Virus record (IMG/VR): IMGVR_UViG_3300050821_002957
Coordinates: 341,632 to 405,631 of that record
Reading direction: 5' to 3' (one strand)
DNA length: 64,000 bases
Under the pieces are notes generated by a model. That model saw nothing but the letters and a program-made list of their open reading frames with translations. It was not told the DNA's origin and searched no databases. This document shows, in pieces, positions 15,717 to 35,841 of this stretch; positions within the stretch are counted from its first letter, which is position 1, and each line of letters opens with the position of its first letter. The position numbers were made by a program, and so were the translations under genes.

Positions 15717-15759
15717 CACATCTATTGACATTGAAAAATAGATGTAGTAAAGTTGAGCT
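15713..15759 (+). promoter_or_regulatory. sigma70-type leaderless promoter with two palindrome variants
   Basis: TTGACA(15725)-17-TAAAGT-6-ATG. Confidence 0.7.
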
Positions 15760-17010: not shown

Positions 17011-17013
17011 CCT

Positions 17014-17951: not shown

Positions 17952-18029
17952 TATATTCCAGATCGGTGTACATCACTGGCATCCGAGTCATTGCAACGAA
18001 CCTTGTCGGCAACTGTAGTGACTACCAAA

Positions 18030-18890: not shown

Positions 18891-19327
18891 TGGACGAATC
18901 TCCGTATCAAGGCATCAGATTCTCGTAACAACTCTAGCAATCCAGGATGAAATTGGTGTGGTTTTTCCATTGCAATCTGAATAACTATGCTGTACGGCAA
19001 CCAAGCAATGAAGCTAGTCTCAAATAGATATTCTGGCTCTGCCTTGAATTCAAACTCCTCAGGAACGATTCCGATGAAACTGTGATATTGGAAACCCTTT
19101 CTGCTGCTTATGTGCGCTTGGTGAAGTTCAATGGGGCCGTAGTAGCCAACCTCCTCACCCATCTCTCGGAGAGCGCTAGAGGCCACGGAAGAGCCATCCT
19201 CGACCATTCCACCGACGATGCCCCAGACATCGCCTTGACGGATGCCGGGTGCTCTCCAGGAAAGACATAAATTTTTGGTGTTTGCGGCAATTGGAAGAAT
19301 TCCGCTTGCCAGAGAAAATTTTTTCAT
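18887..19327 (-). CDS. Nudix hydrolase
   Basis: WGIVGG...SALREMGEEVG. Confidence 0.8.
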   Translation of the reverse strand: MKKFSLASGILPIAANTKNLCLSWRAPGIRQGDVWGIVGGMVEDGSSVASSALREMGEEVGYYGPIELHQAHISSRKGFQYHSFIGIVPEEFEFKAEPEYLFETSFIAWLPYSIVIQIAMEKPHQFHPGLLELLRESDALIRRFVQ

Positions 19328-19851
19328 CTTCCGAACCGTTTGAACATCTCTTTGTCAATGGTAGGAAGATCAAATAAATCTGTCGGTTCCTTTGCTGCTC
19401 TGAATTGAGGACGATTGAAATGTCCCATGTGAAGACCAACTTTGGCACACTCTTCGGCGAACAATTGATAGCCGTTTTGGTTGGTAGGACGTTCTTTAAA
19501 ATTGGGTGAATAATTCAGCTTGCGATTGCCATCTACCCAGACGACCGTAGCTGCCTCACCCCAGTTGTGCCAGGAGCAACCAGGAAGATCGTCGGTCATG
19601 AGATTTGTTTCTTTAGGTTTCCCTTTTGCCATGCAGTCGGCTAAGTACGGCGCACCAGCATGTGTCAGTGCCATGACTTTCAATTCTGCATCTGTTGCAC
19701 TGCGGCCTTGTCTCCACATGGCTGCTTGTTCGAGGGGAGAGACAAGTGTAACGAGAGGTTCAAGCAAGAAACGATGCTTTTTCGTCGCTTCAATTGCTTC
19801 AATCAGTTTCTTGCGAAACTCCGGGATCAGTAAGGATAATTCGGTCGCCAT
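19324..19851 (-). CDS. M15-family L-Ala-D-Glu peptidase homolog, probably inactive
   Basis: SPLEQAAMWRQGR, PGCSWHNWGEA; expected Zn-ligand Asp and final His absent. Confidence 0.6.
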   Translation of the reverse strand: MATELSLLIPEFRKKLIEAIEATKKHRFLLEPLVTLVSPLEQAAMWRQGRSATDAELKVMALTHAGAPYLADCMAKGKPKETNLMTDDLPGCSWHNWGEAATVVWVDGNRKLNYSPNFKERPTNQNGYQLFAEECAKVGLHMGHFNRPQFRAAKEPTDLFDLPTIDKEMFKRFGR

Positions 19852-19971
19852 AAATGTATTTAGTGACCGCCTTGGAGATTCGGTTTATAGATGGAAAAAT
19901 CAGCCATGTCATCCAACCGACATATCCACCGATAATCAAAATCGCAACAAAAGTTCCGCAGAATTGTGCAA

Positions 19972-20484
19972 TCATTGTTGAGCCATCCATGAATAGAGAT
20001 TTGAAAGGTCGAAATTGTTCAATTCGTCTAGTGTCTCTGGAATCGTAGTGTGATGAATTGCTATTCCACCGGCCTCACGCCATTCGGCAACGTTACGAGG
20101 ATGGTCGTCGATTAATAAATTCACAACTCCATCAATCACAGCAAAATCTTTCTTCTCACTACGACACACGATGTGAATGTACTCATCTGCAATTCCTAAT
20201 TCCTGAAAGCACCATATTCGTTTCTCTTCCGGGCAAGAAGGTGCATCATCTGGGTGTGGGGATGCTGAAAGAATGTATGGATTGTATATTTTGATTCGTT
20301 CCCACAGTTGCATAGCACCCGGCATCCATTCTAAATTTATCCAAAATCCAGTGATTGCCTGAATTAGTGCCCATTTTTCTTTGTCGGTTCCGAGACATGG
20401 ATCGTTGAATTCTCGGCCAAGTGCCCTGCGTGCGCCGCCAAGAAAATTGACAAGAACTTGGTCCATGTCACAGTAGACTTTCAT
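19972..20484 (-). CDS. HAD-family 5'(3')-deoxyribonucleotidase
   Basis: DMDQVLVNF, LLIDD, WREAGG. Confidence 0.8.
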   Translation of the reverse strand: MKVYCDMDQVLVNFLGGARRALGREFNDPCLGTDKEKWALIQAITGFWINLEWMPGAMQLWERIKIYNPYILSASPHPDDAPSCPEEKRIWCFQELGIADEYIHIVCRSEKKDFAVIDGVVNLLIDDHPRNVAEWREAGGIAIHHTTIPETLDELNNFDLSNLYSWMAQQ

Positions 20485-20576
20485 TGCTTCATCCTACCAT
20501 GTCTTTAGAATCTGTCTACTGTTGACGAAATTTCAAAGGGTGCTAAATTTGTTTTGCCACAGCAATTTCGTGGTCG

Positions 20577-23471
20577 ATGAAAAACCCTATGAACAAGTAT
20601 TATACGAACGTCTACAGGACTGGCAACCGACTTTTTGTCAGAGAAATTAGAGACGGAAAAAGACGCAATTTTAAGACAGAATACAAACCTACTTTGTACG
20701 TCCCGACCAAGGGAAAAGCTGCTCTTCATTCACCAGACGGTACTCCTGTCGAACCTCTCAATCCAGGTACGATGGGCGACTGTTACCAGTTCCTCCAGAA
20801 ATATAAAGATGTAGGTAATTTCCAAATCTTCGGAAATACAGCCTACGAATACACCTTCATTAACGAAGAATATCCCGGCCTACTCAATTACAAAATAAGT
20901 GAGATGGTCATATGCAACCTTGACATCGAAGTCGCAAAGACAGCCGATGGATACTCTGAAGCTCGGGACGCCGCCAACGAAGTCACTGCCATCACCATGA
21001 AAAGTTCTGGCGACGGCATCTATCACGTCTTTGCCTGCCAACCTTTCGATGACAAGCAATACAATTTTGAACATCAGGATACCATCATCGCCTATCACCA
21101 GTGCGAAGACGAAATGGATCTGTTTTACAAATTCCTCGATCTGTGGGAAAGAATCGAACCGGACATTGTGACCGGCTGGAACATCAGGCTGTACGATATT
21201 CCTTATCTCGTCAATCGAATCTCCCGCATCATGTCAACCGATGACGCAAATCGTCTGTCTCCGTGGGGCATGATCAAAGAAAACACAGTCAACATTTTTG
21301 GCAACCCCGAAGTGGTCTATGATGTCGCTGGTCTGAGCATCCTTGACTACTTGCTCATTTACCGAAAGAATGTTCTGGAGCCTCGTGAATCTTACCGGCT
21401 CGATTACATCGCAGAAGTTGAACTTGGTGAACGTAAAGTAGACTACGGCGAGTACAACGATCTCCAAGATTTGTACGAGCGAAACTTCAAGAAATTCATC
21501 GAATATAACATTCATGATGTCCGCTTGGTTGACCGGATCGAGATAAAACGTAAGTTGATAGAACTACAGGTCGTAGTGGCTTATCATGCCAAAATTAACT
21601 TCGTCGATGTCCTCTCCCAAGTCCGCATGTGGGACACCAATATTTGCAACCACCTTCTGAAGGAAAGAATTGTCGTTCCGCAGAGGACAGACACCGCAAA
21701 AGACACTCAATTCGCAGGCGCATTTGTCATGCAGCCAATTCCTGGCATGTATCACTGGATCGCTTCGTTCGACGTTCAATCTCTGTATCCGATGATCATG
21801 CGTACCCTTAACATGGGTATGGAAACAAAGCTCTCGTACAAAGACCTGACGCCGATGATGAAACAGTATCAAAAGTACATCGGCGAAAATTTGATGCAGA
21901 CACTCACCGATGGAAGCCGGGTAGTAAATCCTGATGCAATCATCGACGGCATGACTGAAGAGTTGATGGAACACTTGCGGGAGCAGGATGTCTCGGTCGG
22001 CGCAAATGGTGTCTTCTATCGTCGTGATCCAAAGTCATTCTATTCGGTAATGATCGAAGAGTTGTTTGACAACCGGCTGGAATATAAAAAGAAGTTGAAG
22101 GCTGCAAAACTTGAACTTTCAACTTGCACTGATTCCACCAGAAAAGCAGAGCTTGAAGACATCGCTTCCATTTACGATCTCAAGCAGCACGCTACAAAGA
22201 TCATGCTCAACAGTTTGTACGGCGCTATGGGCAACCAATACTTCCGCTTTTTCGACGTAGCCAATGCCGAAGCGGTAACGACGACAGGACAGTTCATCAT
22301 TCAGTACATCGCTCGTGGTATCAACGCCTACCTGAACAAGATGATGAAGACTGAGAACAAACAATTCATTGTCTATAGTGACACGGACTCCATCTATGTC
22401 ACATTAGAAACCGTCGTCAACAAGCATCATCCTCATGGTACGACGATGGAAAAGGTTGGCTTCGTAGATCGTATTTGTAAGGATGCAATCCAGCCGCAAA
22501 TCAATCGTCTGTTCCGATATCTGACTGAACGATATTTGAACGGTGTCGGCGAATACTTGCTGATGAACCGTGAAGTCATCGGTGACAAAGGTATCTGGAC
22601 GGCCAAGAAACGTTACCTTATCAATGTGCGGGACAAGGAAGGCATTCGTAAAGAAAAGGCCGAACTCAAGTACATGGGTGTAGAGATCGCCAAGTCATCG
22701 GTTCCTAAGTTCTGCCGGGATGCAATGAAAGAAGCTGTAACTATTGTGATGGAACAAGACCAGGAAACTCTGTTCAAGTTCGTTGCCGACACCGAAGCAA
22801 AATTCAAGGCACAGCCAATTGAAAATGTGAGCTTTCCCCGCAGCGTGAATGGCCTTGCTAAGTACGGTCATCACGAGACGATCTATATCAAGGGTACGCC
22901 GTTCCATACCAAGGGTGCTCTGATGTACAATCACATGCTCGATCTCAAGGGAATGTCAAATAAGTATCCCAAGATCAAAGATGGCGAAAAGATGAAGTTC
23001 TTCTATCTGAAAGAACCCAATCCACTCGGTGTCAATGCAATGGCTTTCCTTACGAAATTTCCGGTAGAGTTTAACATGGCGGAATTTATTGATTGGGATA
23101 CACAGTGGGAAAAAAGTTTCATCGAGCCTCTCAAATTGATTCTCAATGCAATCAAATGGGACACTCAACGACGGGCCAATCTGGATGCTCTGTTTATTTG
23201 GGATGACGACGAAGAAGAGACCAACGACGAAAAAGCTGATCGGGCACAGTACGAAGAAACATGCCGTGACGAATCTGACGAAGAAAGTGAGTCGGATTTT
23301 GACCAGAAAATTGAACTTGCCGAACTGGAACTCGCTTTGTACGATATGGAACGAGTTAAGTCAAAAGCTGGTGATATTGAAGATCCAAAATTCGATCAAC
23401 AACTGGCCGATCTAAAGACCCAGGTGCAGATACTTAAGCACCGATTGACAGATTCCGGTTCCGTGGTGTAA
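20577..23471 (+). CDS. gp43: Family B DNA polymerase
   Basis: Exo DIEV, GWNI..YDIPY, YNIHDV; pol SFDVQSLYP, KIMLNSLYG, YSDTDS, KKRY. Confidence 0.97.
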   Translation: MKNPMNKYYTNVYRTGNRLFVREIRDGKRRNFKTEYKPTLYVPTKGKAALHSPDGTPVEPLNPGTMGDCYQFLQKYKDVGNFQIFGNTAYEYTFINEEYPGLLNYKISEMVICNLDIEVAKTADGYSEARDAANEVTAITMKSSGDGIYHVFACQPFDDKQYNFEHQDTIIAYHQCEDEMDLFYKFLDLWERIEPDIVTGWNIRLYDIPYLVNRISRIMSTDDANRLSPWGMIKENTVNIFGNPEVVYDVAGLSILDYLLIYRKNVLEPRESYRLDYIAEVELGERKVDYGEYNDLQDLYERNFKKFIEYNIHDVRLVDRIEIKRKLIELQVVVAYHAKINFVDVLSQVRMWDTNICNHLLKERIVVPQRTDTAKDTQFAGAFVMQPIPGMYHWIASFDVQSLYPMIMRTLNMGMETKLSYKDLTPMMKQYQKYIGENLMQTLTDGSRVVNPDAIIDGMTEELMEHLREQDVSVGANGVFYRRDPKSFYSVMIEELFDNRLEYKKKLKAAKLELSTCTDSTRKAELEDIASIYDLKQHATKIMLNSLYGAMGNQYFRFFDVANAEAVTTTGQFIIQYIARGINAYLNKMMKTENKQFIVYSDTDSIYVTLETVVNKHHPHGTTMEKVGFVDRICKDAIQPQINRLFRYLTERYLNGVGEYLLMNREVIGDKGIWTAKKRYLINVRDKEGIRKEKAELKYMGVEIAKSSVPKFCRDAMKEAVTIVMEQDQETLFKFVADTEAKFKAQPIENVSFPRSVNGLAKYGHHETIYIKGTPFHTKGALMYNHMLDLKGMSNKYPKIKDGEKMKFFYLKEPNPLGVNAMAFLTKFPVEFNMAEFIDWDTQWEKSFIEPLKLILNAIKWDTQRRANLDALFIWDDDEEETNDEKADRAQYEETCRDESDEESESDFDQKIELAELELALYDMERVKSKAGDIEDPKFDQQLADLKTQVQILKHRLTDSGSVV

Positions 23472-23508
23472 TGATTTACGACGCCCGTTTCAGGGCAGGA
23501 AATAACTA

Positions 23509-24786
23509 ATGGCAAAGAAAGATAAGAAAGGAGCAAAAAAATCAGAAGGTAGTTTTTTTGACGACTTACTCAAGAAAGTAGGACTGGATATTCCGGTCGC
23601 TACAGAAGTCAATGACATTCACAAAACGACCTTTTTCAGCACTGGATCGTTGATGTTGAATGCACTGGTCTCAAGCTCGATGAATGGTGGTCTGGCAGGC
23701 AATAAGATCACCGCTCTGGCAGGCGAGGAAGCAACCGGAAAGACATTCATCGCCTTGCAGTGCATCAAACACTTCTTGGACGAACAACCCACCGGCCACG
23801 TTTTCATTTTCGATTCAGAAGATGATCCGTCGAAGACTGAAGCTGTGATGAAAAAGCGTGGCATCGATACAAGCCGTGTCCACGTAAAGTTCGTCAAGAC
23901 TATTCAGGAATTCCGTCAACTGATGATCAACATCATTGATGGTTACCTGGAACAGCCGGTCGAAAAGCGCCAGCCGATGTTCATGGTGCTGGATTCGCTT
24001 GGAAACCTTTCGACCCTCAAGGAACTTCATGATACAGCGAAGGGTGCCTTGAACAAGAAGGGCGAAGATGTCAGGGATATGACTCGTACATCTTTGATTC
24101 GTGGTTTGTTCCGTGTGTTGACGATCAAGTTGGGCGAGGCGAATGTTCCGTTGCTCATCACCAATCACACCTATCAGACGATGAATCCGTATGGCGCTGC
24201 AACTACGATGAGTGGCGGCGGCGGTCTTCGGTACGCAGCTTCGACGATCATTTATTTGACCAAGAAGAAATTGCGTGATGCAGACAAGGACGTGATTGGA
24301 TCGATTCTGACGGCAACCCTCGACAAGAGCCGTTTCACTCCTCCAGGATTGAAAGCAGACCTACTCCTGACGCACGCAGCCGGTCTAGACAAATATTGGG
24401 GCCTGTTTGAATTTGGCCTTGAGACCGGAATCCTCATTAAGGGAACAGGTGTCGCAGAGAAAAACGACAAGTCTGGCAAAAAGAATGGAATCAAGGCGAA
24501 TAGCTACAAGTTCCCTGATGGTCAGATTGCCGACCGAAAGGAAATCGAAGCGAACCCATCCATGTACTTCGACACCGACATTAACTTTGCGGCGTTTGAA
24601 GAGCAGTGTGCCAAGACGTTCCAATTCGGTGAAGGTCAGGATCGTCCGATTAGTGATGAAGACGAGGCAGACGGTGAGATCGATATCGATGCAGCCGTCG
24701 CAGCAATGCAGGAAGCCTTTGAAGCAGTGGACGAAGCTGGCGATGCCGAAGTCGAAGAGCAGCCAAAAAAGAAAGGAAAGAAATAG
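23509..24786 (+). CDS. uvsX: RecA-like recombinase
   Basis: STGSLMLNAL, GEEATGKT, LDSLGNL, TNHTY, GGGGLRYAAS. Confidence 0.93.
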   Translation: MAKKDKKGAKKSEGSFFDDLLKKVGLDIPVATEVNDIHKTTFFSTGSLMLNALVSSSMNGGLAGNKITALAGEEATGKTFIALQCIKHFLDEQPTGHVFIFDSEDDPSKTEAVMKKRGIDTSRVHVKFVKTIQEFRQLMINIIDGYLEQPVEKRQPMFMVLDSLGNLSTLKELHDTAKGALNKKGEDVRDMTRTSLIRGLFRVLTIKLGEANVPLLITNHTYQTMNPYGAATTMSGGGGLRYAASTIIYLTKKKLRDADKDVIGSILTATLDKSRFTPPGLKADLLLTHAAGLDKYWGLFEFGLETGILIKGTGVAEKNDKSGKKNGIKANSYKFPDGQIADRKEIEANPSMYFDTDINFAAFEEQCAKTFQFGEGQDRPISDEDEADGEIDIDAAVAAMQEAFEAVDEAGDAEVEEQPKKKGKK

Positions 24787-24834
24787 TTGATGTAAGTCGG
24801 GAGGTTCTTTTAGGAGCCTCCCTCAAGAGAAAGA

Positions 24835-25518
24835 ATGGAACAAGCAAAATTAACGAATGACCAGTCTATTGAAATTGGACAGACCGATGAAGCACAGCAG
24901 ATACGAACACTCAGAGCTAACGGTTTTGTGATTGAATCCGCAACCAAATCGGAAGATATAAACGAGAAGATCGACTGTTTTTTGGTTTTGAAAAATGGCA
25001 CACGAGAGGCCATTCAAATCAAGGGCAGAGATAGGAATCCAGACAAGGCAAACATTTATGTCGATCTCCTATCCGATGTCTACGAACCTTATTGTGGTTT
25101 GGGACATCCTGATACCAAAATAGGCCGTGATGAATTCAGTGCTTACAAATGGTACACCTGCCGCATCAAGGAAGAAATGGTCTTAGTAAGCGGCGCTGCT
25201 CACAAAGATATCATTAAAACTGTCTTGGCTGAATGGGAAGAATCAGAAAACCGTAAGCAGATTGACAGACGATTGAGTGAATGGGTCACAACACTTCATC
25301 GAGTTGGAAACAAGGTTGATTGGGAACCAAATTTTGAATTGTTCAGAGAATTCCGGCAGTGGACTTTTGAAAGTGAGTCTTATCCGGGAGTGCAAATCAA
25401 ATGTACCCAAGATAAGCGTCGAACCGGCTGGCAGAAAAACAGGCCGAAGTTATTAGTCTTCGTTCCAATTTCTTCGTTCCAGCCAAAACATGTCAGAAGG
25501 TTCAAACTAAATGGATAG
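24835..25518 (+). CDS. PD-(D/E)XK-like nuclease-fold protein
   Basis: EDINEKIDCF...IQIKGR. Confidence 0.5.
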   Translation: MEQAKLTNDQSIEIGQTDEAQQIRTLRANGFVIESATKSEDINEKIDCFLVLKNGTREAIQIKGRDRNPDKANIYVDLLSDVYEPYCGLGHPDTKIGRDEFSAYKWYTCRIKEEMVLVSGAAHKDIIKTVLAEWEESENRKQIDRRLSEWVTTLHRVGNKVDWEPNFELFREFRQWTFESESYPGVQIKCTQDKRRTGWQKNRPKLLVFVPISSFQPKHVRRFKLNG

Positions 25519-27118
25519 AATCGAATCAGTCATCCTCCGCTCACTCATCTACGACGATTTGTATGTGCGCCGGGTACTTCCTTTCTTGGAAGACGAATAT
25601 TTTCTCGACAAGACTGAACGACTTATTTTTTCCAAGCTCAAAAATTACATCGATACGTACAACGTTCCACCGACTAAGGAATCGTTGATCATCGACCTGA
25701 ACACATCCGGCGCTGAGACCGACACCATCGAAGAAGTTGATAGTTATCTCAGTATTCTTGATGCCGAAAAAGAAGAGAAGCCTCATGTAGACTGGTTGGT
25801 CGAGCGTACCGAATCCTGGTGCCAAGAAAAGGCCATTCACAATGCTGTTCTCGAAGTTATCAACATTCTAGATGGCAAGAACAAACACGTAGACAGAGGC
25901 ATGATCCCGAAGTTACTCCAGGATGCTCTTGCCAAATCATTTGATCCTCATGTAGGCCATGATTGGTACGAAGACGCTGGCGCTCGACATGACTTTTACA
26001 AGAAGGTCGATAGTCGCATACCATTCCATCTTGATTATTTCAACATGATCACTAAGAATGGAATTCCGAATAAGACATTGAACATTTGTCTCGCCGGAAC
26101 CAACGTCGGCAAGTCGCTGTTCATGTGCGATCTGTCGGCTAATTATTTGATGAAGGGCAAGAACGTCCTTTACATCACATTGGAAATGGCGGAAGAGCGT
26201 GTCGCAGAGCGTATCGATGCCAATTTACTGGACATTCCGGTCGATGAATTAAGTTTCATCAGCAAGGAATCGTTTCATAAAAAGATCGAACGCATTAACA
26301 GTCAGACCAAAGGCCATCTGATCATCAAGGAATATCCGACAGCCCAGGCGCACGTAGGTCACTTCCGGCATTTGTTGAATGAGCTTTGGCTGAAGAAGTC
26401 TTTCAAGCCAGATGCCATCATGATCGATTATCTGAACATCTGTGCATCAAGCAGAGTCAAGGCCAGCAGCGGCATGTACGAAATGGTCAAAGGGATCGCA
26501 GAAGAATTGCGTGGTCTCGCTGTCGAATTCAATGTCCCGATCTGGAGTGCAACACAGATGAACCGTGCTGGCTTCAACAATCAGGACCCAGACTTGACCA
26601 ACACGTCTGAATCGTTTGGTCTCCCGGCAACGGCTGACTTCATGTTTGCTTTGGTTAACAGTGACGAACTTAAGAACATGAATCAGTTGCTCGTGAAAAT
26701 TTTGAAGAATCGTTACGGCGATGTCAACTTCAGAAACAAAGAAACCGGCAAGATTATGAATAAGTTTGTCGTCGGCGTAGACAAGAGCAAACAGAAACTC
26801 TATAATGTCAGCGATGCGGCGCAGGATTTATCTGATGACGATCCGACTGGTGGTGCTCCGAAACCGAAAATGCCGCCGAGAAAAGAACTGGACATCGGTG
26901 TAGATGAAAGTGATGCTCCGTGGACGGTCGTAGATGAAGGTGTGACCGAACCGACGTTTGACATCGATCTACCAGCGAACGACAGAAAGTTCCGAGAGTC
27001 TGAAGAGGATGCAGAGCGTCGTAGAAACGCAACGATAGCTCCTGCTGCGCCGTACAGCCCAAAGACGGCCACTCCTAGTGCCTTCGCTGCCGGAAAGAAA
27101 CATAACATCAAACTATGA
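25511..27118 (+). CDS. gp41: Replicative DNA helicase
   Basis: LAGTNVGKSL, ITLEMAEE, IKEYPT, DYLNIC, SATQ, SESFGLPATAD. Confidence 0.97.
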   Translation: MDRIESVILRSLIYDDLYVRRVLPFLEDEYFLDKTERLIFSKLKNYIDTYNVPPTKESLIIDLNTSGAETDTIEEVDSYLSILDAEKEEKPHVDWLVERTESWCQEKAIHNAVLEVINILDGKNKHVDRGMIPKLLQDALAKSFDPHVGHDWYEDAGARHDFYKKVDSRIPFHLDYFNMITKNGIPNKTLNICLAGTNVGKSLFMCDLSANYLMKGKNVLYITLEMAEERVAERIDANLLDIPVDELSFISKESFHKKIERINSQTKGHLIIKEYPTAQAHVGHFRHLLNELWLKKSFKPDAIMIDYLNICASSRVKASSGMYEMVKGIAEELRGLAVEFNVPIWSATQMNRAGFNNQDPDLTNTSESFGLPATADFMFALVNSDELKNMNQLLVKILKNRYGDVNFRNKETGKIMNKFVVGVDKSKQKLYNVSDAAQDLSDDDPTGGAPKPKMPPRKELDIGVDESDAPWTVVDEGVTEPTFDIDLPANDRKFRESEEDAERRRNATIAPAAPYSPKTATPSAFAAGKKHNIKL

Positions 27119-28022: not shown

Positions 28023-28029
28023 CTAAATA
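28023..28029 (+). promoter_or_regulatory. T4-late-like promoter CTAAATA (one of about 11 copies)
   Basis: Also at 28982, 32408, 40751, 43497, 48278, 54465, 54975 and 19857-19863 (minus); variants ATAAATA 44216, CTAAGTA 54210. Confidence 0.7.
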
Positions 28030-28044
28030 GAAACAGACTCGTAA

Positions 28045-28956
28045 ATGAAGACCTTTGCCCAATTCATGACTGAAGATACGTCCAGCGGTTTCTACGCTTT
28101 TCGTAATCTTAACGCCCAAAGTGCAGAATTCCTCTATGGATGGATGCAGGAACATGGCATTCCTAATCCAATTCCAATGGATAAGCTGCATGTTACGGTA
28201 GTCTGTTCTGAAAACGATGTCCTGGGTTATACACCCGATCCGATGCCACTGCAAATTAGTCCAGCAACTTTTAAACTCGATATGATGAACGAAGCTCTGG
28301 TCATTAAATTCAAAAGTGATGCTCTGGAAGAGCAATGGCAACGAGCAATGAACATGGGTGCAAAGAGTCGATATCCAAAACTCACTCCCCACATCAGTCT
28401 TTCGTACAATGTTCCTCTCGATTACGACTATCATGATCTAAAGCCACCACCATCATTTTTGGTCTTTAATGAAGAGCAGATGCGACCTTTAATCGATGGC
28501 TGGGCGGCGGCAAACAATCTTCGTGAATATACAGGTGACATTATTTCAGACAGGCCGGGGATCTACGTTCCACAAAACAATCTGAACATTCCCCGAGAAG
28601 AGATGCCACAAATCGCCGATCACCACAAAATGGGCTTCGTCGATTGGCTAGAAGAGCAAGGAATTACAGTACAATTTTTAGATATTCCTGTGGCACTTCT
28701 TCGGTCGGTCCAGAATACTATCGACATGAAAAAGGTTCAGCATCTTGCAGATAAGATGCCAGATGCCGCCATGCGAAAGGCGGTTATTGTCTCCAAAGAT
28801 CTCTATATTTTAGATGGTCATCATCGTTGGCTTGCAATTTTGAATCGTGATCCTCATCAGACAATTGAAGCATATCGTGTAAATCTCCCAATCAAGGATC
28901 TACTCGCCATCGCTGGCAATTATCACCAAACCTCCTACAAACTCACAGCGGCTTAA
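28045..28956 (+). CDS. Acb1/gp57B-like 2H phosphodiesterase fused to a ParB-like domain, with capsid-targeting-like N-terminus
   Basis: LHVTVVCS and PHISLSY (2H motifs); IPREEMPQI, VSKDLYILDGHHRW; N-terminus MKTFAQFMTE. Confidence 0.8.
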   Translation: MKTFAQFMTEDTSSGFYAFRNLNAQSAEFLYGWMQEHGIPNPIPMDKLHVTVVCSENDVLGYTPDPMPLQISPATFKLDMMNEALVIKFKSDALEEQWQRAMNMGAKSRYPKLTPHISLSYNVPLDYDYHDLKPPPSFLVFNEEQMRPLIDGWAAANNLREYTGDIISDRPGIYVPQNNLNIPREEMPQIADHHKMGFVDWLEEQGITVQFLDIPVALLRSVQNTIDMKKVQHLADKMPDAAMRKAVIVSKDLYILDGHHRWLAILNRDPHQTIEAYRVNLPIKDLLAIAGNYHQTSYKLTAA

Positions 28957-29285: not shown

Positions 29286-32200
29286 ATGTCACTTTGGAAT
29301 AATCAAACCCCTCCGGTTCTGTACCCGGATGCTGTAGCAACGAACGCAGGTTGGGCACATCCCGTAACTGGTGAATTGCTCGTCTGTGTCACAGGTCTGT
29401 CCACATATAAGAATGAAGGCGCAGGCACACAGCTTGTCAATGCTCGAATCTTGGGCGCAAAAGCTCAGGGCGCAGATCCTATCGTCCACAAGAAAATCTT
29501 TGCTGCTGGCGACGTAATTGTTGTCGAAGCAATTTTCTTGGAGCCTGTCACAAAGACTGGCGGCACACCGACGATGGCAATCAACATCAACGGTAACTCT
29601 CGGACCTTTACCCAATTCACTGATCCGACCAATTTTGATGCAAAAACCAAGGACAAAGTAACTGGTTTCACGATCAGTGCTGGTGGTTCTGGATACTTGG
29701 TCGGTGATAAATTGACCTTCACTGGCGGTGGTGGTTCGAGCGCAGAAGCAGTTGTAGCAACAGTTTCAAGCGGCGCAATCACAGGCATCACATTGCTTGC
29801 TGGTGGTTCTGGATACACTTCGGCTCCGACAGTCGGCGGCGGAACTGGAACGGGAGCAACTATCGTAGCAAAACTCGGTTCACTTGCAAACGGCCCTGGA
29901 ACGAATCGTTGGCTCTTCGGATATACAGTTGCATCTAACGAAACCGCAACCTCGGCACAGATTATTTTCCCATCTAGCATCACTGGTGTCTTCGATACCA
30001 CTGAGGATGCTCTTGGAGCTTCGGCAGCAGGCACAGCCGTTATTGGAACTGGAGTAACTTCCGTAACAGTAAGCGCTGGTGGTTCTGGTTATACATCGGC
30101 ACCGAAAGTTAGCTTTACTGGCGGCACTCCAACGACACCAGCAACAGCAGTAGCAGTTCTTGATCAAAGTGTTGGTTCTATCGCAGTTACCGCAGGTGGT
30201 TCTGGATACACCAGCGCACCCACGGTTACCTTTACAGGTGGCGGTGGATCTAGCTCAGTCGCAACAGCAGTTCTTGCATCGAGTGGTTCAATCAAATCGA
30301 TCACGATCACAAACGGTGGTACAGGCGGAACAAACGGCACTGGTGTAGCAGTTTCGATCACTGGTGGCGGCGGCACTGGAGCAACAGCAACAGCAACAAT
30401 CGCAGGCGGTGTTGTCACAGTGATCACCATAACTGCTGGTGGTTCTGGATACACTTCGGCACCTACTGTCTCGGTAACGGGTCAGGCTGGCTCGCCGGTT
30501 TATGCTCCAGTCATTGGCAAGGTAGTCGCATCAGTCACAGTTGGCACCCCAGGAAGCGGATACACTTCGGCTCCGACCATTGGTTTCACTGGTGGTTCTG
30601 GAAGCGGCGCAACAGCAACGGCTACAATGGCAACATTGACTGATGTACTTGCTGTAACTGTCACGAACCCTGGTGTAGGCTATACGGGCACACCAACCGT
30701 TTCGTTCACTCCTCAGGGCGGTGGCGCAGCAGCAACAATCTCGGTACTTGGTGGAACTGAAGGTTCTGGCAATGTAACCGGCGTAACCATCACAAATGGT
30801 GGAACACTTTATACTACAGCCCCTTCAGTCACTACGACAAGCGGTGGTTCTGGTGTCACCTTCACAGCAGTTTTGACGGGTGGTGTTGTAACCAGCGTAA
30901 CTTTCAGTGGAACTGGTACTGGATACACAAACGGTGACGCTTTGATCTTCACTGGTGGTTTGGCAGGTAGTGGCGCAACGGCAACGGCAACGACCGCAGG
31001 CGCAGTTGAATCGGTCACTATCACAAACGGTGGCTCTGGATACTGGAATGTTCCTACAGTCGCCTTCAGTGGTGGCTCTGGAACTGGTGCAGCAGGCACC
31101 GCAGTAGTCAGCCACGGCAAAGTAACAAGTGTGACGATGACCAACCCAGGAACAGGTTATACTGGTGCTCCTACGGTTGCATTCACAGAGCCATCATCGG
31201 CAGTGACCAATCCAACTTTCAACGGAACACCTTCCGCAGCCGGATACACTGTAAATGGTGTCGCACCGACAATCACAGCAGCAGCAATCTCTGGTTACCA
31301 AACCGGAACAACCTTCGTTACAAACAACATTGTGACCTTGACTCTTACGACAAGCGTCCCGGTTTACGTAACTGGTTCTCCGTACATCACGCTTGAAATC
31401 AATAGCAACCCAGAAACGGCTTCGTATGTAAATGGCAGCGGTACAACTACTTTGATCTTCCAGTACGAAGTTCAAGCAAGTGACTTCTGCACGGCAACGG
31501 AATTTACCATCACTTCCCCAGTTGTTCTCAACAGTGGAACGATGACAGACTTCCAGGGCAATGCTTTGGTCTTGACCTTTACGGCACCTACTGTCACGGC
31601 AGTTGTTGTCAACAGTCCGCTGGTTCCTAGCTTCACAGCAGCAGCGGTAACTGGTGGTCCTGCATACACGACATCCGGCACGGTGACGATCACTTTGACG
31701 GCGAATGTCAACGCAACAGTAGTAACGACAAACGGTACGCCTTATATCGAATTGTACATCGGAAGCAGTGTCCAGCACGCTACCTATGCTTCTGGTACAG
31801 GCACAACGAGCTTGGTCTTCACTTATACAGTGGGTTCGGGCGACGTAGCTACACCAAGAGCATTCTCGATTGGTTCACAAATCTTCTTGGCAGGCGGCAC
31901 GATTCAAAATGCTTCGGCAGTCAACTTCCCAGCATTCTTTACGGCACCTGACACTTCGGAAGATACGGTCAATTCTGGTTCGATTGCAGCATGGGCAAGC
32001 TCGGCTATGAGTGGTTTCAACTCTGGCACTGCTTACATCACTGGAAACAACATCACATTGACGCTTACAGCAAGCGAAAATGCAACCGTCAGCACAGCAA
32101 ACGGTACGCCTTATATCGAATTGTACATCGGAAACGCAACACGTTTTGCAATCTACACTTCAGGTTCGGGAACAACAGCCTTGGTATTCAAGTACACGGC

Positions 32201-32345
32201 TCTTTCGACCGACTCGGCAGTAGCAAAGACCTTCTCTACCGGAGACCAGATCCTATTCAATGGCGGCTCTATCGTAGACGGTTCTTCAAATCACTTCCCT
32301 GAGGACTTCATCGTCCCAGCAACATCAACCATCACTGTCAACTAA
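29286..32345 (+). CDS. Large Gly/Thr-rich repeat virion (fibre/decoration) protein
   Basis: MSLWN start; many (T/S)xGGSGYTSAPTV repeats; C-terminal Ig-like repeats with GSGTTxLxFxY. Confidence 0.75.
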   Translation: MSLWNNQTPPVLYPDAVATNAGWAHPVTGELLVCVTGLSTYKNEGAGTQLVNARILGAKAQGADPIVHKKIFAAGDVIVVEAIFLEPVTKTGGTPTMAININGNSRTFTQFTDPTNFDAKTKDKVTGFTISAGGSGYLVGDKLTFTGGGGSSAEAVVATVSSGAITGITLLAGGSGYTSAPTVGGGTGTGATIVAKLGSLANGPGTNRWLFGYTVASNETATSAQIIFPSSITGVFDTTEDALGASAAGTAVIGTGVTSVTVSAGGSGYTSAPKVSFTGGTPTTPATAVAVLDQSVGSIAVTAGGSGYTSAPTVTFTGGGGSSSVATAVLASSGSIKSITITNGGTGGTNGTGVAVSITGGGGTGATATATIAGGVVTVITITAGGSGYTSAPTVSVTGQAGSPVYAPVIGKVVASVTVGTPGSGYTSAPTIGFTGGSGSGATATATMATLTDVLAVTVTNPGVGYTGTPTVSFTPQGGGAAATISVLGGTEGSGNVTGVTITNGGTLYTTAPSVTTTSGGSGVTFTAVLTGGVVTSVTFSGTGTGYTNGDALIFTGGLAGSGATATATTAGAVESVTITNGGSGYWNVPTVAFSGGSGTGAAGTAVVSHGKVTSVTMTNPGTGYTGAPTVAFTEPSSAVTNPTFNGTPSAAGYTVNGVAPTITAAAISGYQTGTTFVTNNIVTLTLTTSVPVYVTGSPYITLEINSNPETASYVNGSGTTTLIFQYEVQASDFCTATEFTITSPVVLNSGTMTDFQGNALVLTFTAPTVTAVVVNSPLVPSFTAAAVTGGPAYTTSGTVTITLTANVNATVVTTNGTPYIELYIGSSVQHATYASGTGTTSLVFTYTVGSGDVATPRAFSIGSQIFLAGGTIQNASAVNFPAFFTAPDTSEDTVNSGSIAAWASSAMSGFNSGTAYITGNNITLTLTASENATVSTANGTPYIELYIGNATRFAIYTSGSGTTALVFKYTALSTDSAVAKTFSTGDQILFNGGSIVDGSSNHFPEDFIVPATSTITVN
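31729..32133 (+). repeat. 36-bp exact direct repeat between duplicated Ig-like domains
   Basis: CAAACGGTACGCCTTATATCGAATTGTACATCGGAA at 31729-31764 and 32098-32133. Confidence 0.8.
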
Positions 32346-34436: not shown

Positions 34437-35012
34437 ATGGGATTGGTTGATACTTACATTGTCTATCGTTTTGTTCGGCTGCTTACTACTCCGTGGGATG
34501 AGACTGATGCTTTTAGAGAAGGTGTCATTGACGGAAATGGGAAGCTCTTGATTGATACCGACAAGATGACTGACAAACAATCGGATGCATACACGTTGTT
34601 TGATCGATTGGTTTACAACATCAAACGTCTGATCGAAAAGATCCCAGGCGGAAAATCAAAAATTGGAACCTATGCTGCGGCGATGTATTTGTTCAAAGAG
34701 CAGATGGGTGATGAAGAGGGAAGAATCGTGCTAGAAAGAAGTTTCATGTCATATCTCAAGGAGAACGACGCCCTTGAAGGCGATTATCTCGCAGAGCAGT
34801 TCAAGCCAGAAGAGACACTACCTCAAGGCAACTATCGGGTCCTAAATACCATGATGGATGTACATGGCAATCTTGTCCAAAAAGGAACCATTGTCATTTC
34901 CCACAGCAACCAAAAGCCGACAGCCAAGGTGCTCGGAATCGATGTTTATGCTCTAAAGACATCCACAGGAAAAACGGTGGTGGTAAGTCATGAAGACATT
35001 TCAGAAATTTAG
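34437..35012 (+). CDS. Conserved T4-like hypothetical protein
   Basis: YRFVRLLTTPW, GVIDGNG, AYTLFDRLVYNIKRL. Confidence 0.8.
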   Translation: MGLVDTYIVYRFVRLLTTPWDETDAFREGVIDGNGKLLIDTDKMTDKQSDAYTLFDRLVYNIKRLIEKIPGGKSKIGTYAAAMYLFKEQMGDEEGRIVLERSFMSYLKENDALEGDYLAEQFKPEETLPQGNYRVLNTMMDVHGNLVQKGTIVISHSNQKPTAKVLGIDVYALKTSTGKTVVVSHEDISEI

Positions 35013-35841
35013 ATCCGACGCTCAATTGAACGAAGCATTAATCACTCGTGCGGAAGCAATAGCTGCATATGAGGAAGGTATCGCCGATGGTTCTATTCGT
35101 ATCTGTGAATCTTGTGGTTCTCCCAACTTGTTTGAGGTCGAGAAATTTGGAATGACTTGTGTGGACTGCGGAAATCGTGGTCCTGGTGTCGTTCCTGTTC
35201 GAGAGATCCAGGAACCGGACGAAGCACTTCAGAGTGGCTTTGACGAATCAGAAGATGGCTATCAAAAATTCTATGCCACACATTTCACCAAAAAGGGTGG
35301 AGCACATACTGACCGATTTGGACATGAATACACCGACGAACGCATAAAACAGATGCATCAACAGGGTGAGACGCCGGATACAGTATGGCCGAAACAATCT
35401 AAAGCAGCACATCGTAAACCATCCTGGATGAATGAAGATGGTGGCGCTGGTGGAGGGGCTGCTGGTGGTGGCGCAGGCGGTTCTGGTGGGGCTGGAGCAG
35501 GGAATGGGGCAGCAAGTGGCGCAGAATGCACTTGCACCGGCACAACGACGGCATCTGAGTCCTGCCCAATCCACGGTGTTGCGACTGGTTTCTATGGCGA
35601 TCCTTCGGGCGACCTTTACAAAAAGAAAAAGAAGGATAAAATTGAATACAACGAAGAAGCACCGACCAATAATGCTGGCTCTGGAAACATTGCCGGTATC
35701 GGTGTAGGTCCGCAAGGAGAACCCGGCGTCGATCCAGTTTATCAGAAGCTCCGCAAACAACTGAAGCTGATGAATGGTCCTGCTGTCGATCCTCGTATGT
35801 TCCAGGCAAAAATTTTTGGGCGTAAACCACCACAGATGTAA
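34990..35841 (+). CDS. Probable internal head protein
   Basis: MKTFQKF N-terminus, xNE sites, EEAPTNNAGSGNIAG. Confidence 0.6.
   Translation: MKTFQKFRSDAQLNEALITRAEAIAAYEEGIADGSIRICESCGSPNLFEVEKFGMTCVDCGNRGPGVVPVREIQEPDEALQSGFDESEDGYQKFYATHFTKKGGAHTDRFGHEYTDERIKQMHQQGETPDTVWPKQSKAAHRKPSWMNEDGGAGGGAAGGGAGGSGGAGAGNGAASGAECTCTGTTTASESCPIHGVATGFYGDPSGDLYKKKKKDKIEYNEEAPTNNAGSGNIAGIGVGPQGEPGVDPVYQKLRKQLKLMNGPAVDPRMFQAKIFGRKPPQM

What the first reader, a model, noticed from the sequence alone, without database searches (positions are those of the whole stretch)
28023..28956. Acb1-like anti-CBASS enzyme apparently built to be packaged in the capsid, fused to ParB
Seen: 2H motifs HVT and HIS in a gp57B/Acb1-like domain. 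The N-terminus MKTFAQFMTE closely resembles the T4 internal-protein capsid targeting sequence (MKTYQEFIAE). A late promoter motif lies upstream, and an LRE site sits at the junction with a ParB/Srx-like domain (DGHHRW). Known: Acb1 degrades cyclic oligonucleotide signals, and T4 prohead protease cuts after L/I-x-E. Inference: a virion-delivered polyprotein, processed into a signal-degrading enzyme and a ParB-like nucleotide-processing domain that act immediately on injection.
Basis: partly seen in the sequence, partly recalled or inferred. Interest (0 to 1): 0.85.

Follow-up and report, generated by a model that had tools for sequence, protein, structure and literature searches.

The report
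Capsid-targeted Acb1–ParB anti-defence protein
A 405-kb T4-like phage encodes an anti-CBASS signal-degrading enzyme fused to a ParB-like domain and carrying the short N-terminal tag that T4 uses to load proteins into its head, so it is probably injected with the DNA; this is predicted, not shown.

Summary
ORF 28045-28956 (+, 303 aa, no internal stop) has four parts. There is a 10-residue leader, MKTFAQFMTE. There is a complete Acb1 2H phosphodiesterase domain (Pfam 5e-22; TM 0.81 to phage FBB1 Acb1; HVT and HIS intact). There is a disordered linker holding L-R-E. There is a ParB/sulfiredoxin-fold domain with DGHHRW.

About 45 metagenomic relatives keep the fusion. All 29 with an N-terminus keep the leader, and 30 of 31 keep [LIV]-x-E in the linker.

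The same genome has a T4-type head module about 20-30 kb past the window end: portal, Peptidase_S77 (gp21) protease, gp22-type scaffold and gp23. Its gp22 and gp23 genes sit behind the same CTAAATA motif that lies 16 nt upstream of this gene.

The leader recurs on unrelated proteins of this phage (a SprT-like peptidase, a 283-aa protein). It also recurs on solo ParB-like proteins and on at least 34 other protein families in viral contigs, often beside T4-type genes.

Capsid targeting is therefore well supported by comparison but unproven. Cleavage at LRE, delivery and substrate are inference. 2H-portal fusions and virion ParB domains were described in 2017, so this is a new variant of a known kind.

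The parts
28023..28029 (+). CTAAATA late-promoter-like motif, 16 nt upstream of the ATG
   Evidence: 9 of 10 window copies are intergenic and sit just before gene starts. The same motif lies 38 and 41 nt upstream of the gp22 and gp23 genes of the same genome. It is kept upstream of the orthologues in L006, L008, L009, L010 and L011.
28045..28956 (+). Acb1-ParB fusion gene, 303 aa, uninterrupted
   Evidence: ORF list and sequence. 47 homologues share the Acb1 Pfam domain, and about 45 of them have the full architecture.
28045..28074 (+). Capsid-targeting-like leader MKTFAQFMTE (residues 1-10); predicted cleavage after E10
   Evidence: Family consensus is MKTYxQFxxE, kept in 29 of 29 N-termini. 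The segment is modelled as detached from the fold, pLDDT below 50. The T4 CTS sequence and its functional positions come from PMC8442874 and PMC9026906.
28087..28509 (+). Acb1 2H phosphodiesterase domain (residues 15-155)
   Evidence: Pfam PF23474 E = 5.3e-22; PDB 7t26 E = 4e-11; Foldseek match to 7t26 with target-normalised TM 0.81.
28189..28197 (+). First catalytic motif, H49-V-T51
   Evidence: Aligns with the first H-x-T of FBB1 Acb1. H49 is invariant. The tetrad is defined in PMC9117128.
28390..28398 (+). Second catalytic motif, H116-I-S118
   Evidence: Aligns with the second H-x-T of FBB1 Acb1. H116 is invariant.
28501..28557 (+). Disordered inter-domain linker (residues 153-171)
   Evidence: AlphaFold2 pLDDT is below 50 over 153-171.
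28519..28527 (+). L159-R-E161, candidate prohead-protease site
   Evidence: [LIV]-x-E is found at this aligned position in 30 of 31 relatives, and E161 in 30 of 31. It is one of only three [LI]-x-E sites in the protein.
28558..28944 (+). ParB/sulfiredoxin-fold domain of the phage polyvalent-protein type (residues 172-300)
   Evidence: phrog_2859 E = 2e-28 and phrog_11358 E = 4e-7. Foldseek matches sulfiredoxin 1xw4 and ParB-N 5k5d and 6sdk. 3277 representative clusters carry the domain. It also lies inside DarB-like giant proteins.
28813..28830 (+). D-G-H-H-R-W motif (residues 257-262)
   Evidence: D, G, H260, R and W are each kept in at least 90% of the fusion family. D-G-x-H is invariant, and R kept in at least 90%, in 35 solo-domain relatives.
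34990..35841 (+). Second protein with the same kind of leader (MKTFQKFRSDAQLNE...), 283 aa
   Evidence: Found. Orthologues start MKTFEKFRKDAQLNE (L008) and MKTFYEFRKKINE (L011). The only family hit is a weak A2L zinc-ribbon match.

Best explanation
The gene encodes a late-expressed, two-module anti-defence protein of a T4-like jumbo phage.

Shown by computation:
- The N-terminal module is a complete Acb1-type 2H phosphodiesterase with an intact catalytic tetrad.
- The C-terminal module is a ParB/sulfiredoxin-fold domain of the family that also occurs solo or inside giant DarB-like and polyvalent virion proteins.
- The two are joined by a disordered linker.
- The protein starts with a 10-residue leader of the T4 capsid-targeting type.
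- The genome encodes a gp21-type prohead protease, a gp22-type scaffold and gp23.

Inferred:
- The leader docks the protein on the scaffolding core, so it is enclosed in the prohead.
- The prohead protease removes the leader after M-T-E10.
- The protease possibly also cuts after L-R-E161, releasing a roughly 17-kDa Acb1 and a roughly 16-kDa ParB-like protein.
- The products are ejected with the DNA into the next host. There Acb1 hydrolyses cyclic di- and trinucleotide alarm signals (CBASS, possibly type III CRISPR) before any phage gene is expressed.
- The ParB-like module acts on nucleotides or DNA (NTP binding or hydrolysis, or nicking).
- Copies that are not packaged would also protect the producing cell late in infection, when prohead protease activity is reported to switch CBASS on.
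For: Domains:
- Acb1 by Pfam, PDB sequence match and fold.
- ParB/Srx by fold and PHROGs.

Leader:
- Kept in 29 of 29 family N-termini at positions 2, 3, 4, 6, 7, 8 and 10, while residues 11-14 vary.
- T4 genetics places targeting at residues 4 and 7 and processing at 8 and 10 (PMC9026906).
- The same leader type heads a SprT-like peptidase gene two genes downstream of gp23 (MLKFQQWLAE; homologues MLSFLQFLTE, MLSFQQFIVE, MLSFVAWLTE).
- It also heads the 283-aa protein at 34990.
- P0048 carries it on an unrelated N-domain fused to the ParB-like domain, with L-S-E in its linker, and solo ParB-like proteins carry it, for example MKTLHEFLKE and MKTFKQYLNE.
- By the relaxed leader pattern, solo or N-terminal ParB-like proteins match in 9 of 89 cases against 8 of 917 control ORFs, Fisher p = 3e-6.
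- 77 of 85 matches are at ORF starts. The 53 proteins of 90 aa or more fall into 34 homology groups. Tandem clusters occur. 34 of 80 loci carry T4-type marker genes.

Machinery:
- Portal_T4, Peptidase_S77 (E = 9e-38), T4_CASP and Gp23 lie about 20-30 kb beyond the window end on an almost identical contig. The neighbouring SprT gene maps to the window's own IMG/VR contig.
- gp23 has an L-M-E|A-A site before its conserved core.

Timing:
- CTAAATA precedes this gene and the gp22 and gp23 genes.

Precedent:
- Portal-Acb1 fusions in two portal families.
- 2H-portal and 2H-MuF fusions and virion ParB domains (PMC5512222).
- A solo ParB-like homologue is annotated as a structural protein of Limestone-type phages.
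Against: - There is no virion proteome or any other experiment. The phage is uncultured.
- The mature parts are acidic to neutral (pI 5.0 and 6.4), unlike the basic T4 internal proteins. Foreign proteins carrying a CTS are nevertheless packaged in T4 (PMC9026906).
- The window protein has Met, not Leu or Ile, at position 8.
- Tyr follows E161, and the adjacent E-Y-T-G-D is itself conserved, so conservation of the linker may have another cause.
- Acb1 proteins of cultured T4-like phages have related N-termini that lack E10 (MKSFKDFVNP, MEFKDFSTG). Part of the leader could therefore be an inherited Acb1 feature rather than a tag.
- CTAAATA also lies 69 nt upstream of a ribonucleotide-reductase gene and 6 nt upstream of a RuvC-like gene, so it may not be strictly late.
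- Only about 105 of 405 kb of the genome was read.
Confidence: 0.55

Rival explanations
1. The protein is a late cytoplasmic enzyme and is not packaged. It is made late because that is when prohead protease activity triggers CBASS. The N-terminal motif is then either an inherited feature of T4-lineage Acb1 proteins or serves translation or stability.
For: - CBASS CD-NTases are reported to be activated late, by prohead protease cleavage (PMC12991175).
- Acb1 of cultured T4-likes starts MKSFKDFVNP, MKSFLEVAKP or MEFKDFSTG, with no E10.
- The protein is not basic.
- Nothing on packaging, virions, portal or fused proteins was found in the founding Acb1 paper, and nothing on fusions, portal, virion or capsid in a 2025 survey of viral 2H phosphodiesterases.
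Against: - The same leader, with [LIVM]-x-E, heads unrelated proteins in the same genome and in many T4-like contigs, sometimes in tandem clusters. This is the behaviour of T4 internal-protein loci, not of a domain-specific feature.
- The leader is modelled as detached from the fold.
Confidence: 0.25
2. The protein is packaged and the leader is removed, but it stays a single two-domain protein. The conserved L/I-x-E-Y-T-G-D stretch is then an inter-domain or ligand-contact motif, not a cleavage site.
For: - Tyr at P1' and conservation extending beyond [LI]-x-E (E-Y-T-G-D).
- The fusion is maintained in about 45 relatives down to 42% identity. That would be less expected if the two halves acted independently.
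Against: - The site is kept in 30 of 31 members within a disordered linker of variable length.
- Solo ParB-like proteins carry a leader ending in [LIV]-x-E directly before the point where the domain starts.
- P0048, with a different N-terminal cargo, also has L-S-E in its linker.
Confidence: 0.3
3. The 2H domain is not an anti-CBASS enzyme. It acts instead on RNA ends (2',3'-cyclic phosphate), on 2'-5' oligoadenylate-like molecules, or as an RNase.
For: - PHROG 755 is labelled 'RNA ligase'.
- LigT-type 2H enzymes are the next structural neighbours after Acb1 and a Burkholderia phage BCSR5 phosphodiesterase (9q2y).
- Both possibilities were raised for phage 2H domains in PMC5512222.
- Viral 2H phosphodiesterase groups are reported to differ in specificity (PMC13728456).
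Against: - The best matches by sequence and by fold are Acb1 itself.
- The gene occupies the same slot after gp41 as a stand-alone Acb1 in another T4-like contig.
- The genome carries other signal-directed counter-defences: an Acb2/Tad1-hairpin protein and NAD-salvage genes.
Confidence: 0.1
4. The protein is a protease-gated enzyme. The leader and linker sites make it a substrate of the prohead protease, so that it is activated or released at the moment the protease would otherwise trigger CBASS. Delivery to the next cell is not the point.
For: - Two conserved, exposed [LIVM]-x-E sites.
- The report of protease-triggered CBASS (PMC12991175).
Against: - T4 gp21 acts inside the prohead on core-bound substrates (established knowledge; PMC9026906).
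- The leader occurs on many cargo types unrelated to CBASS, including SAM lyase, GNAT and HNH proteins.
Confidence: 0.07

Closest known systems
[quoted passage not shown]
   Same: - A 10-residue N-terminal leader, MKT-aromatic-x-(Q/E)-F-aliphatic-x-E.
- The genome encodes a gp21-type protease, a gp22-type scaffold and gp23.
- The leader is shared by unrelated cargo proteins.
- The predicted role, an injected counter-defence, matches IPI* acting against GmrSD.
   Different: - The cargo here is a 33-kDa, two-domain, acidic enzyme rather than a small basic or inhibitor protein.
- A second candidate cleavage site would split it in two.
- The host phage is a 405-kb uncultured relative whose DNA polymerase is only about 41% identical to its closest cultured relatives, T4-like cyanophages.
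- Packaging has not been tested.
Acb1 (T4 gp57B; Erwinia phage FBB1 Acb1, PDB 7t26 and 7t27)
   Same: - The fold (target-normalised TM 0.81).
- The Pfam family.
- The HxT/HxT-type catalytic tetrad, here HVT and HIS.
   Different: - Known Acb1 proteins are stand-alone, about 150 aa, and described as cytoplasmic.
- This one has the CTS-like leader, a late promoter motif and a fused ParB-like domain.
- T4-type 57B starts MEFKDFSTG and has no [LI]-x-E.
Polyvalent proteins of phages and conjugative elements (Iyer et al. 2017, PMC5512222), including 2H-portal and 2H-MuF fusions and DdrB-like ParB domains
   Same: - They combine effector domains, 2H and ParB/Srx among them, that are predicted to enter the host with the DNA.
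- They sit in a late or virion gene context.
- Partners of the ParB-like domain found here are typical of that class: Zeta-toxin/AAA_33 kinase-type domains, a Strawberry-notch-type helicase domain and ART-PolyVal.
   Different: - The predicted route into the virion is a cleavable T4-type leader, not covalent fusion to a portal, MuF or giant protein.
- Only two domains are present.
- A profile comparison with P1 DdrB was inconclusive.
Portal-Acb1 fusion proteins in IMG/VR contigs
   Same: An Acb1 domain physically attached to a virion component. Seven long Acb1-containing ORFs were scanned. Six are portal fusions, four in Phage_portal_3 and two in Portal_Mu. The seventh is fused to a nucleoside 2-deoxyribosyltransferase-like domain.
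   Different: There the Acb1 domain is the C-terminal extension of the portal itself, about 12 copies per virion and fixed in place. Here it would be a free, processed internal protein.
Vibriophage ICP3 Gp15 ejectosome protein (bioRxiv 10.1101/2025.07.23.666291)
   Same: A virion or ejection protein that counteracts CBASS.
   Different: Gp15 inhibits the CapV effector stoichiometrically and does not degrade cGAMP. It is not homologous to this protein.

Membership tests
Acb1 (Pfam PF23474) | Profile match above the curated cut-off over the whole domain | tested here: met
   78.6 bits against a cut-off of 27; residues 15-155 on profile positions 2-143 of 144.
Acb1 (Pfam PF23474) | HxT/HxT catalytic tetrad (H44, T46, H113, T115 in the Acb1-3'3'-cGAMP crystal structure; PMC9117128) | tested here: met
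   H49-V-T51 and H116-I-S118 align with the two motifs. H49 and H116 are invariant and T51 is kept in at least 90% of relatives. The second motif has Ser in place of Thr.
Acb1 (Pfam PF23474) | Acb1 fold | tested here: met
   Foldseek match to 7t26: E = 4.6e-11, target-normalised TM 0.81, rmsd 2.8 Å. The domain is modelled at pLDDT mostly 80-95.
Acb1 (Pfam PF23474) | Cleavage of CBASS cyclic di- and trinucleotides | not testable with these tools
   Needs a biochemical assay.
T4-type CTS-bearing internal (capsid-targeted) proteins | N-terminal leader of about 10 residues with the targeting residues at positions 4 and 7 and the processing residues at 8 and 10 | tested here: met
   The window protein has F4, F7, M8 and E10. 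The family has Y/F4, F/L7, L/I/M/V8 and E10 in 29 of 29 N-termini. The functional positions come from PMC9026906.
T4-type CTS-bearing internal (capsid-targeted) proteins | The genome encodes a gp21-type prohead protease and a gp22-type scaffolding core | tested here: met
   Peptidase_S77 at L056:5686-6378 (E = 9e-38); T4_CASP at 7020-8534; Gp23 at 8622-9935; Portal_T4. The same region maps to the window's own IMG/VR contig.
T4-type CTS-bearing internal (capsid-targeted) proteins | The same leader is shared by unrelated cargo proteins | tested here: met
   - SprT-like protein, the 283-aa protein, P0048 and solo ParB-like proteins.
- 34 homology groups in IMG/VR, with tandem clusters.
T4-type CTS-bearing internal (capsid-targeted) proteins | Late transcription | tested here: inconclusive
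   CTAAATA is shared with the gp22 and gp23 genes, but it also lies upstream of nrd-like and RuvC-like genes. No transcript data exist.
T4-type CTS-bearing internal (capsid-targeted) proteins | Small, highly basic protein (as T4 internal proteins are described in PMC8442874) | tested here: not met
   The protein is 33.5 kDa after leader removal, with pI 5.6; the halves have pI 5.0 and 6.4. This is not a requirement for packaging, because CTS-tagged foreign proteins are packaged (PMC9026906).
T4-type CTS-bearing internal (capsid-targeted) proteins | Presence in the virion and a processed N-terminus | not testable with these tools
   The phage is uncultured and no proteome exists.
ParB/sulfiredoxin superfamily | ParB/Srx fold | tested here: met
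   Foldseek matches sulfiredoxin 1xw4 (probability 1.0, target-normalised TM 0.53, 26% identity) and ParB-N 5k5d and 6sdk.
ParB/sulfiredoxin superfamily | Conserved Gly-x-x-Arg pocket motif (here D-G-H-H-R) | tested here: met
   D257, G258, H260 and R261 are each kept in at least 90% of relatives. D-G-x-H is invariant in 35 solo relatives.
ParB/sulfiredoxin superfamily | Sequence-profile match to a curated ParB family | tested here: inconclusive
   Pfam ParBc_2 scores 13.7 bits against a cut-off of 23.6. phrog_1033, a ParB-like family, matches at E = 1.3e-3. The domain profile weakly matches the free serine kinase 5x0j at E = 0.07.
DdrB-like ParB domains of polyvalent proteins (Iyer 2017) | Homology to the N-terminal domain of P1 DdrB | tested here: inconclusive
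   hhalign of the domain profile against P1 DdrB gives E = 0.44 and probability 0.13. It aligns only the D-G-H-H-R region to residues 103-137 of DdrB.
DdrB-like ParB domains of polyvalent proteins (Iyer 2017) | Found solo or inside multi-domain phage proteins next to late or virion genes | tested here: met
   - The domain occurs solo at 117-170 aa and inside proteins of up to 2209 aa among the representatives, and in the roughly 4650-aa DC1 gp67.
- DC1 gp67 is annotated DarB-like.
- Partner domains are ART-PolyVal, Zeta/AAA_33 and a Strawberry-notch-type helicase domain.
- pf16 gp103 lies beside head genes.
- The Kuttervirus homologue is annotated as a structural protein.

The most novel reading that the evidence does not exclude
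T4-like phages, from jumbo relatives to ordinary marine and freshwater ones, use the CTS leader as a general loading tag for a 'disaggregated polyvalent protein' arsenal. Candidate cargoes seen here are Acb1, ParB-like, SprT-like peptidase, Zeta-type kinase, SAM lyase, GNAT and HNH proteins. On this reading, signal-degrading Acb1 is pre-loaded in the capsid and is active from the instant of DNA entry. The N-termini of Acb1 in cultured T4-likes, which keep the aromatic pair but lack E10, may be remnants or unprocessed versions of the same tag. That would make virion delivery an overlooked property of Acb1 more widely.
Probability: 0.35. Interest if true: 0.8.

Novelty: new variant of a known kind. 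Interest (0 to 1): 0.62.

Why it matters
Acb1 is treated as an enzyme the phage must first express. A pre-packaged copy would close the window between DNA entry and gene expression against CBASS and other cyclic-oligonucleotide defences. It would also change how escape from these systems is modelled.

The work gives a simple, searchable signature for predicting injected effectors in uncultured T4-like phages: an MKT[FY]xQFxxE-type leader, a gp21-type protease in the genome and a CTAAATA motif upstream. A first pass already recovers SAM lyase, GNAT, HNH, transglycosylase and nucleotidyltransferase cargoes.

It also links two bodies of work that have been separate. One is the T4 capsid-targeting system. 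The other is the polyvalent-protein concept.

Tried and rejected
- Megablast of the region against 50,697 phage records found nothing. No cultured phage has the fusion at 80% coverage or more.
- NCBIfam gave no hit for the fusion, the SprT-like protein or the 283-aa protein.
- A look-up of the first window ORF found no record.
Walking downstream through an almost identical ENA contig worked.
- tblastn of the pf16 protease and major capsid protein against the loci held at that stage found no head genes.
- Single-protein scans of viral contigs with the SprT-like and 283-aa proteins returned only the source contig.
- hhalign against P1 DdrB was inconclusive, so the C-domain is not filed as 'DdrB-like'.
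- Searches for 'Acb1' with 'portal', and with 'virion' or 'packaged', surfaced no paper describing virion-packaged Acb1 among those listed and opened. Five of them were opened and had nothing on it.
- The detection of a gp57B homologue in Morganella phage MP1 virions rests on 2 peptides, and the authors flag such identifications as possible impurities. It is kept only as a weak hint.
- No sigma-70-like promoter or intrinsic terminator of note flanks the gene.
Full report
**What is there**

The finding's coordinates run from a CTAAATA motif (28023-28029) to the stop of a single open reading frame, 28045-28956 on the + strand, 303 aa. An in-frame TAA lies directly before the ATG, and there is no internal stop.

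The gene sits in a T4-type replication block. A DnaB/gp41-like helicase and a 2OG-Fe(II) oxygenase lie upstream. A conserved 84-aa gene, a 1019-aa repeat-rich virion structural protein and, further on, a gp61-like primase lie downstream. A family-B DNA polymerase, UvsX and a gp44 clamp loader are also in the window. The polymerase is only about 41% identical to its best cultured relatives, T4-like cyanophages.

The window is the last 64 kb of IMG/VR contig IMGVR_UViG_3300050821_002957, which is 405,631 bp long.

**Domains**

- Residues 15-155 match Pfam Acb1 (PF23474) end to end: 78.6 bits against a cut-off of 27, E = 5e-22. They also match the crystallised FBB1 Acb1, 7t26, at E = 4e-11.
- H49-V-T51 and H116-I-S118 align with the two H-x-T motifs that form the Acb1 catalytic tetrad (PMC9117128). 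Both histidines are invariant in 31 relatives.
- An AlphaFold2 model built on that alignment (mean pLDDT 80) has two well-folded domains, residues 13-152 and 172-300. Residues 1-12 and 153-171 fall below pLDDT 50.
- Foldseek places the first domain on Acb1 (target-normalised TM 0.81). It places the second on sulfiredoxin and ParB N-terminal domains.
- By sequence the second domain is phrog_2859 (E = 2e-28) and phrog_11358. It matches curated ParB families only weakly.
- Its D-G-H-H-R-W motif is conserved.

**The fusion is a family**

An indexed search of 5.8 billion proteins found 47 homologues carrying the Acb1 Pfam domain. About 45 of them have the same two-domain architecture, down to 42% identity. 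Several sit on contigs of 370-405 kb. Gene order around the fusion is conserved in the IMG/VR relatives. No cultured phage has the fusion.

**The leader**

The T4 capsid targeting sequence is MKTYQEFIAE (PMC8442874). Genetics on IPIII places targeting mainly at residues 4 and 7 and processing at residues 8 and 10. gp21 cuts after L/I-x-E (PMC9026906).

The window protein starts MKTFAQFMTE. In all 29 family members that have an N-terminus:

- position 2 is K;
- position 3 is T or S;
- position 4 is Y or F;
- position 6 is Q or E;
- position 7 is F or L;
- position 8 is L, I, M or V;
- position 10 is E.

Residues 11-14 vary in sequence and number.

Four lines of evidence show that this is a modular tag and not just the start of this one domain.

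1. Other proteins of the same phage carry it.
   - A SprT-like zinc-peptidase gene two genes downstream of gp23 starts MLKFQQWLAE. Its homologues start MLSFLQFLTE, MLSFQQFIVE and MLSFVAWLTE.
   - A 283-aa protein at 34990 starts MKTFQKFRSDAQLNE. Its orthologues start MKTFEKFRKDAQLNE and MKTFYEFRKKINE.
2. The ParB-like domain occurs with the leader in other settings.
   - P0048 has an unrelated N-terminal module, starts MKTFAAYITE and has L-S-E in its linker.
   - Solo versions start MKTLHEFLKE, MKSFNTFILE, MKTFKQYLNE or MLSFKQFLRE, directly before the first strand of the domain.
   - By the relaxed leader pattern, 9 of 89 such proteins match against 8 of 917 control ORFs, p = 3e-6. The controls that do match are themselves in T4-like contexts.
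3. The leader is widespread in viral contigs.
A permuted control pattern hits 20.
   - 77 of 85 matches sit at ORF starts.
   - The 53 proteins of 90 aa or more fall into 34 homology groups.
   - One contig has four consecutive leader-bearing genes.
   - 34 of 80 loci carry T4-type marker genes.
   - Recognisable cargoes include SAM lyase, GNAT, HNH, a lytic transglycosylase and a cytidylyltransferase.
4. Another T4-like contig, L048, has a stand-alone Acb1 starting MMGFKDYLQE. It lies in the same slot after gp41, next to a second leader-bearing gene.

**The machinery and the timing**

Walking through an almost identical ENA contig (3 mismatches in 20.5 kb between two independent assemblies of that stretch) reached a T4-type head module about 20-30 kb past the window end. 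It contains Portal_T4, Peptidase_S77 (the gp21 family, E = 9e-38), T4_CASP (gp22-type scaffold) and Gp23. The adjacent SprT-like gene maps to positions 13,297-26,364 of the window's own contig.

The gp23 homologue has L-M-E followed by A-A just before its conserved core. That is where a T4-like propeptide cut would be expected (inference).

CTAAATA occurs 10 times in the window. Nine copies lie in the 8.9% of sequence that is non-coding, each just before a gene. In the head module the motif lies 38 and 41 nt upstream of the gp22 and gp23 genes. It is kept upstream of the fusion gene in relatives with 42-55% protein identity. I read it as the late promoter. The caveat is that it also lies upstream of an nrd-like and a RuvC-like gene.

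**The junction**

L159-R-E161 is one of three [LI]-x-E sites in the protein, and the only one in a disordered segment. At the aligned position, 30 of 31 relatives have [LIV]-x-E, while linker length varies. Solo ParB-like proteins with a leader end that leader in [LIV]-x-E where the fused domain begins. This fits a second protease cut. However, Tyr follows E161 and the following Y-T-G-D is also conserved, so cleavage is less secure than removal of the leader. I put it near 0.35-0.4.

**The C-terminal domain**

An exhaustive HMMER search found 3277 representative clusters. The domain occurs solo at about 117-170 aa, or at any position in proteins of up to about 2200 aa. Its partners include Zeta-toxin/AAA_33 kinase-type domains, a Strawberry-notch-type helicase domain and ART-PolyVal.

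In cultured phages it occurs in several settings:

- as a solo gene in Ackermannviridae, where one copy is annotated as a structural protein by reference to Dickeya virus Limestone;
- in T4-like Aeromonas phages and in pf16, beside head genes;
- inside the roughly 4650-aa DarB-like protein of Bcep22-type podophages.

This matches the description of ParB domains of polyvalent proteins in PMC5512222. A direct profile comparison with P1 DdrB was inconclusive. What it does here is unknown. NTP binding or hydrolysis, or nicking, are the activities known for this fold.

**Prior knowledge and novelty**

- PMC5512222 already noted 2H domains fused to portal or MuF proteins. It suggested they might degrade nucleotide signals of defence systems.
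- I found such portal-Acb1 fusions to be common in IMG/VR. Seven long ORFs were tested by Pfam. Six were portal fusions from two portal families, and one was a fusion to a nucleoside 2-deoxyribosyltransferase-like domain.
- The founding Acb1 paper and the other Acb1 papers opened do not mention virion association.
- The MP1 virion proteome lists a gp57B homologue with 2 peptides. The authors treat such identifications as possible impurities.
- A 2026 preprint reports that prohead proteases switch on CBASS late in infection (PMC12991175). That gives late expression a value of its own, and it is the basis of the main rival explanation.

The finding is therefore a new variant of a known kind: a virion-delivered counter-defence effector in which Acb1 rides on the T4 CTS route.

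**Verdict**

Capsid targeting is about 0.55-0.6 likely and junction cleavage about 0.35-0.4. Acb1-type activity is likely but untested. Everything beyond sequence, fold and comparative pattern is inference.

Noticed in passing
window 19857(-), 28023, 28982, 32408, 40751, 43497, 48278, 54465, 54975; L056 1960, 6975, 8574: CTAAATA is a promoter-like motif placed just before genes. In four cases (19857-, 43497, 48278, 54975) only 6 nt separate it from the ATG, which would make those late mRNAs leaderless or nearly so. Few of these genes show a Shine-Dalgarno sequence.
   Followed up: partly
window 5927-13163: A run of NUDIX, cytidylyltransferase-like (faint hit), NAMPT and PRPP-synthase genes. 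It looks like an NAD+ reconstitution (anti-NADase-defence) cluster. The domain names come only from the precomputed Pfam list.
   Followed up: no
about 9-10 kb upstream of window position 1 on the same contig (no DNA served): A gene with the Acb2/Tad1 hairpin Pfam domain. The phage seems to carry a signal sponge as well as Acb1.
   Followed up: no
window 34990-35841: A 283-aa protein with the same kind of leader (MKTFQKFRSDAQLNE). It has a weak zinc-ribbon hit and orthologues of variable length (190-400 aa). It is a candidate second internal protein.
   Followed up: partly
L056:10492-11562 (same genome, two genes downstream of gp23): A SprT-like zinc peptidase starting MLKFQQWLAE. The leader is conserved in its four homologues that have an N-terminus (five found in all, one truncated). 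It is a candidate packaged protease.
   Followed up: partly
L013, L015-L019, L022, L024-L028, L030-L044 (IMG/VR loci): Many Acb1 domains form the C-terminal end of 620-715-aa proteins. Six such proteins were checked by Pfam (L015, L018, L019, L022, L026, L041). All are portal proteins, four Phage_portal_3 and two Portal_Mu. L012 instead has a nucleoside 2-deoxyribosyltransferase-like domain fused to Acb1.
   Followed up: partly
L065-L144 (IMG/VR loci found with the leader pattern), e.g. L132:6505-9422(-): The MKT[FY]xQFxxE leader heads at least 34 unrelated protein families, sometimes as tandem gene clusters (four in L132). Cargoes include SAM lyase, GNAT, HNH, a lytic transglycosylase and nucleotidyltransferases. 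Several have CTAAATA or ATAAATA upstream.
   Followed up: partly
L062:1501-2049, L063:1501-2124, L064:1501-2124, L001:2492-2941: Acb1 of cultured T4-like phages begins MKSFKDFVNP (POP12), MKSFLEVAKP (EC-F1), MKSFLEITKP (K14-2) or MEFKDFSTG (T4-type). POP12 and T4-type keep an aromatic pair three residues apart, as in the leader (FKDF), but none has E at position 10. In ECO4 the gene lies next to ipI. This is possibly a degenerate or unprocessed tag.
   Followed up: partly
L003:2285-3136 (Aeromonas phage Aswh_1): A Zeta-toxin-like 283-aa protein starting MKRFKDFVLE. It lies two genes upstream of the solo ParB-like gene and next to a head outer capsid gene.
   Followed up: no
window 29286-32345: A 1019-aa protein made largely of G-G-S-G-Y-T-S-A-P-T-V-type repeats. 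It hits many 'virion structural protein' PHROGs. It follows a conserved 84-aa gene that has its own CTAAATA.
   Followed up: no
L005:8834-9547, L008:8199-8975, L010:3726-4514: Relatives carry an extra gene starting MYGI(V/I)Y...T/ITN...GK.Y (GIY-YIG-like by eye) upstream of the fusion gene, separated from it by one small ORF. This points to homing-endonuclease traffic in this slot.
   Followed up: no
window about 50300 (inferred from the contig ranges): An independent 404,282-bp ENA assembly of the same phage breaks inside the window, while the IMG/VR contig breaks at the window end. This is consistent with a circularly permuted genome of about 404 kb.
   Followed up: no
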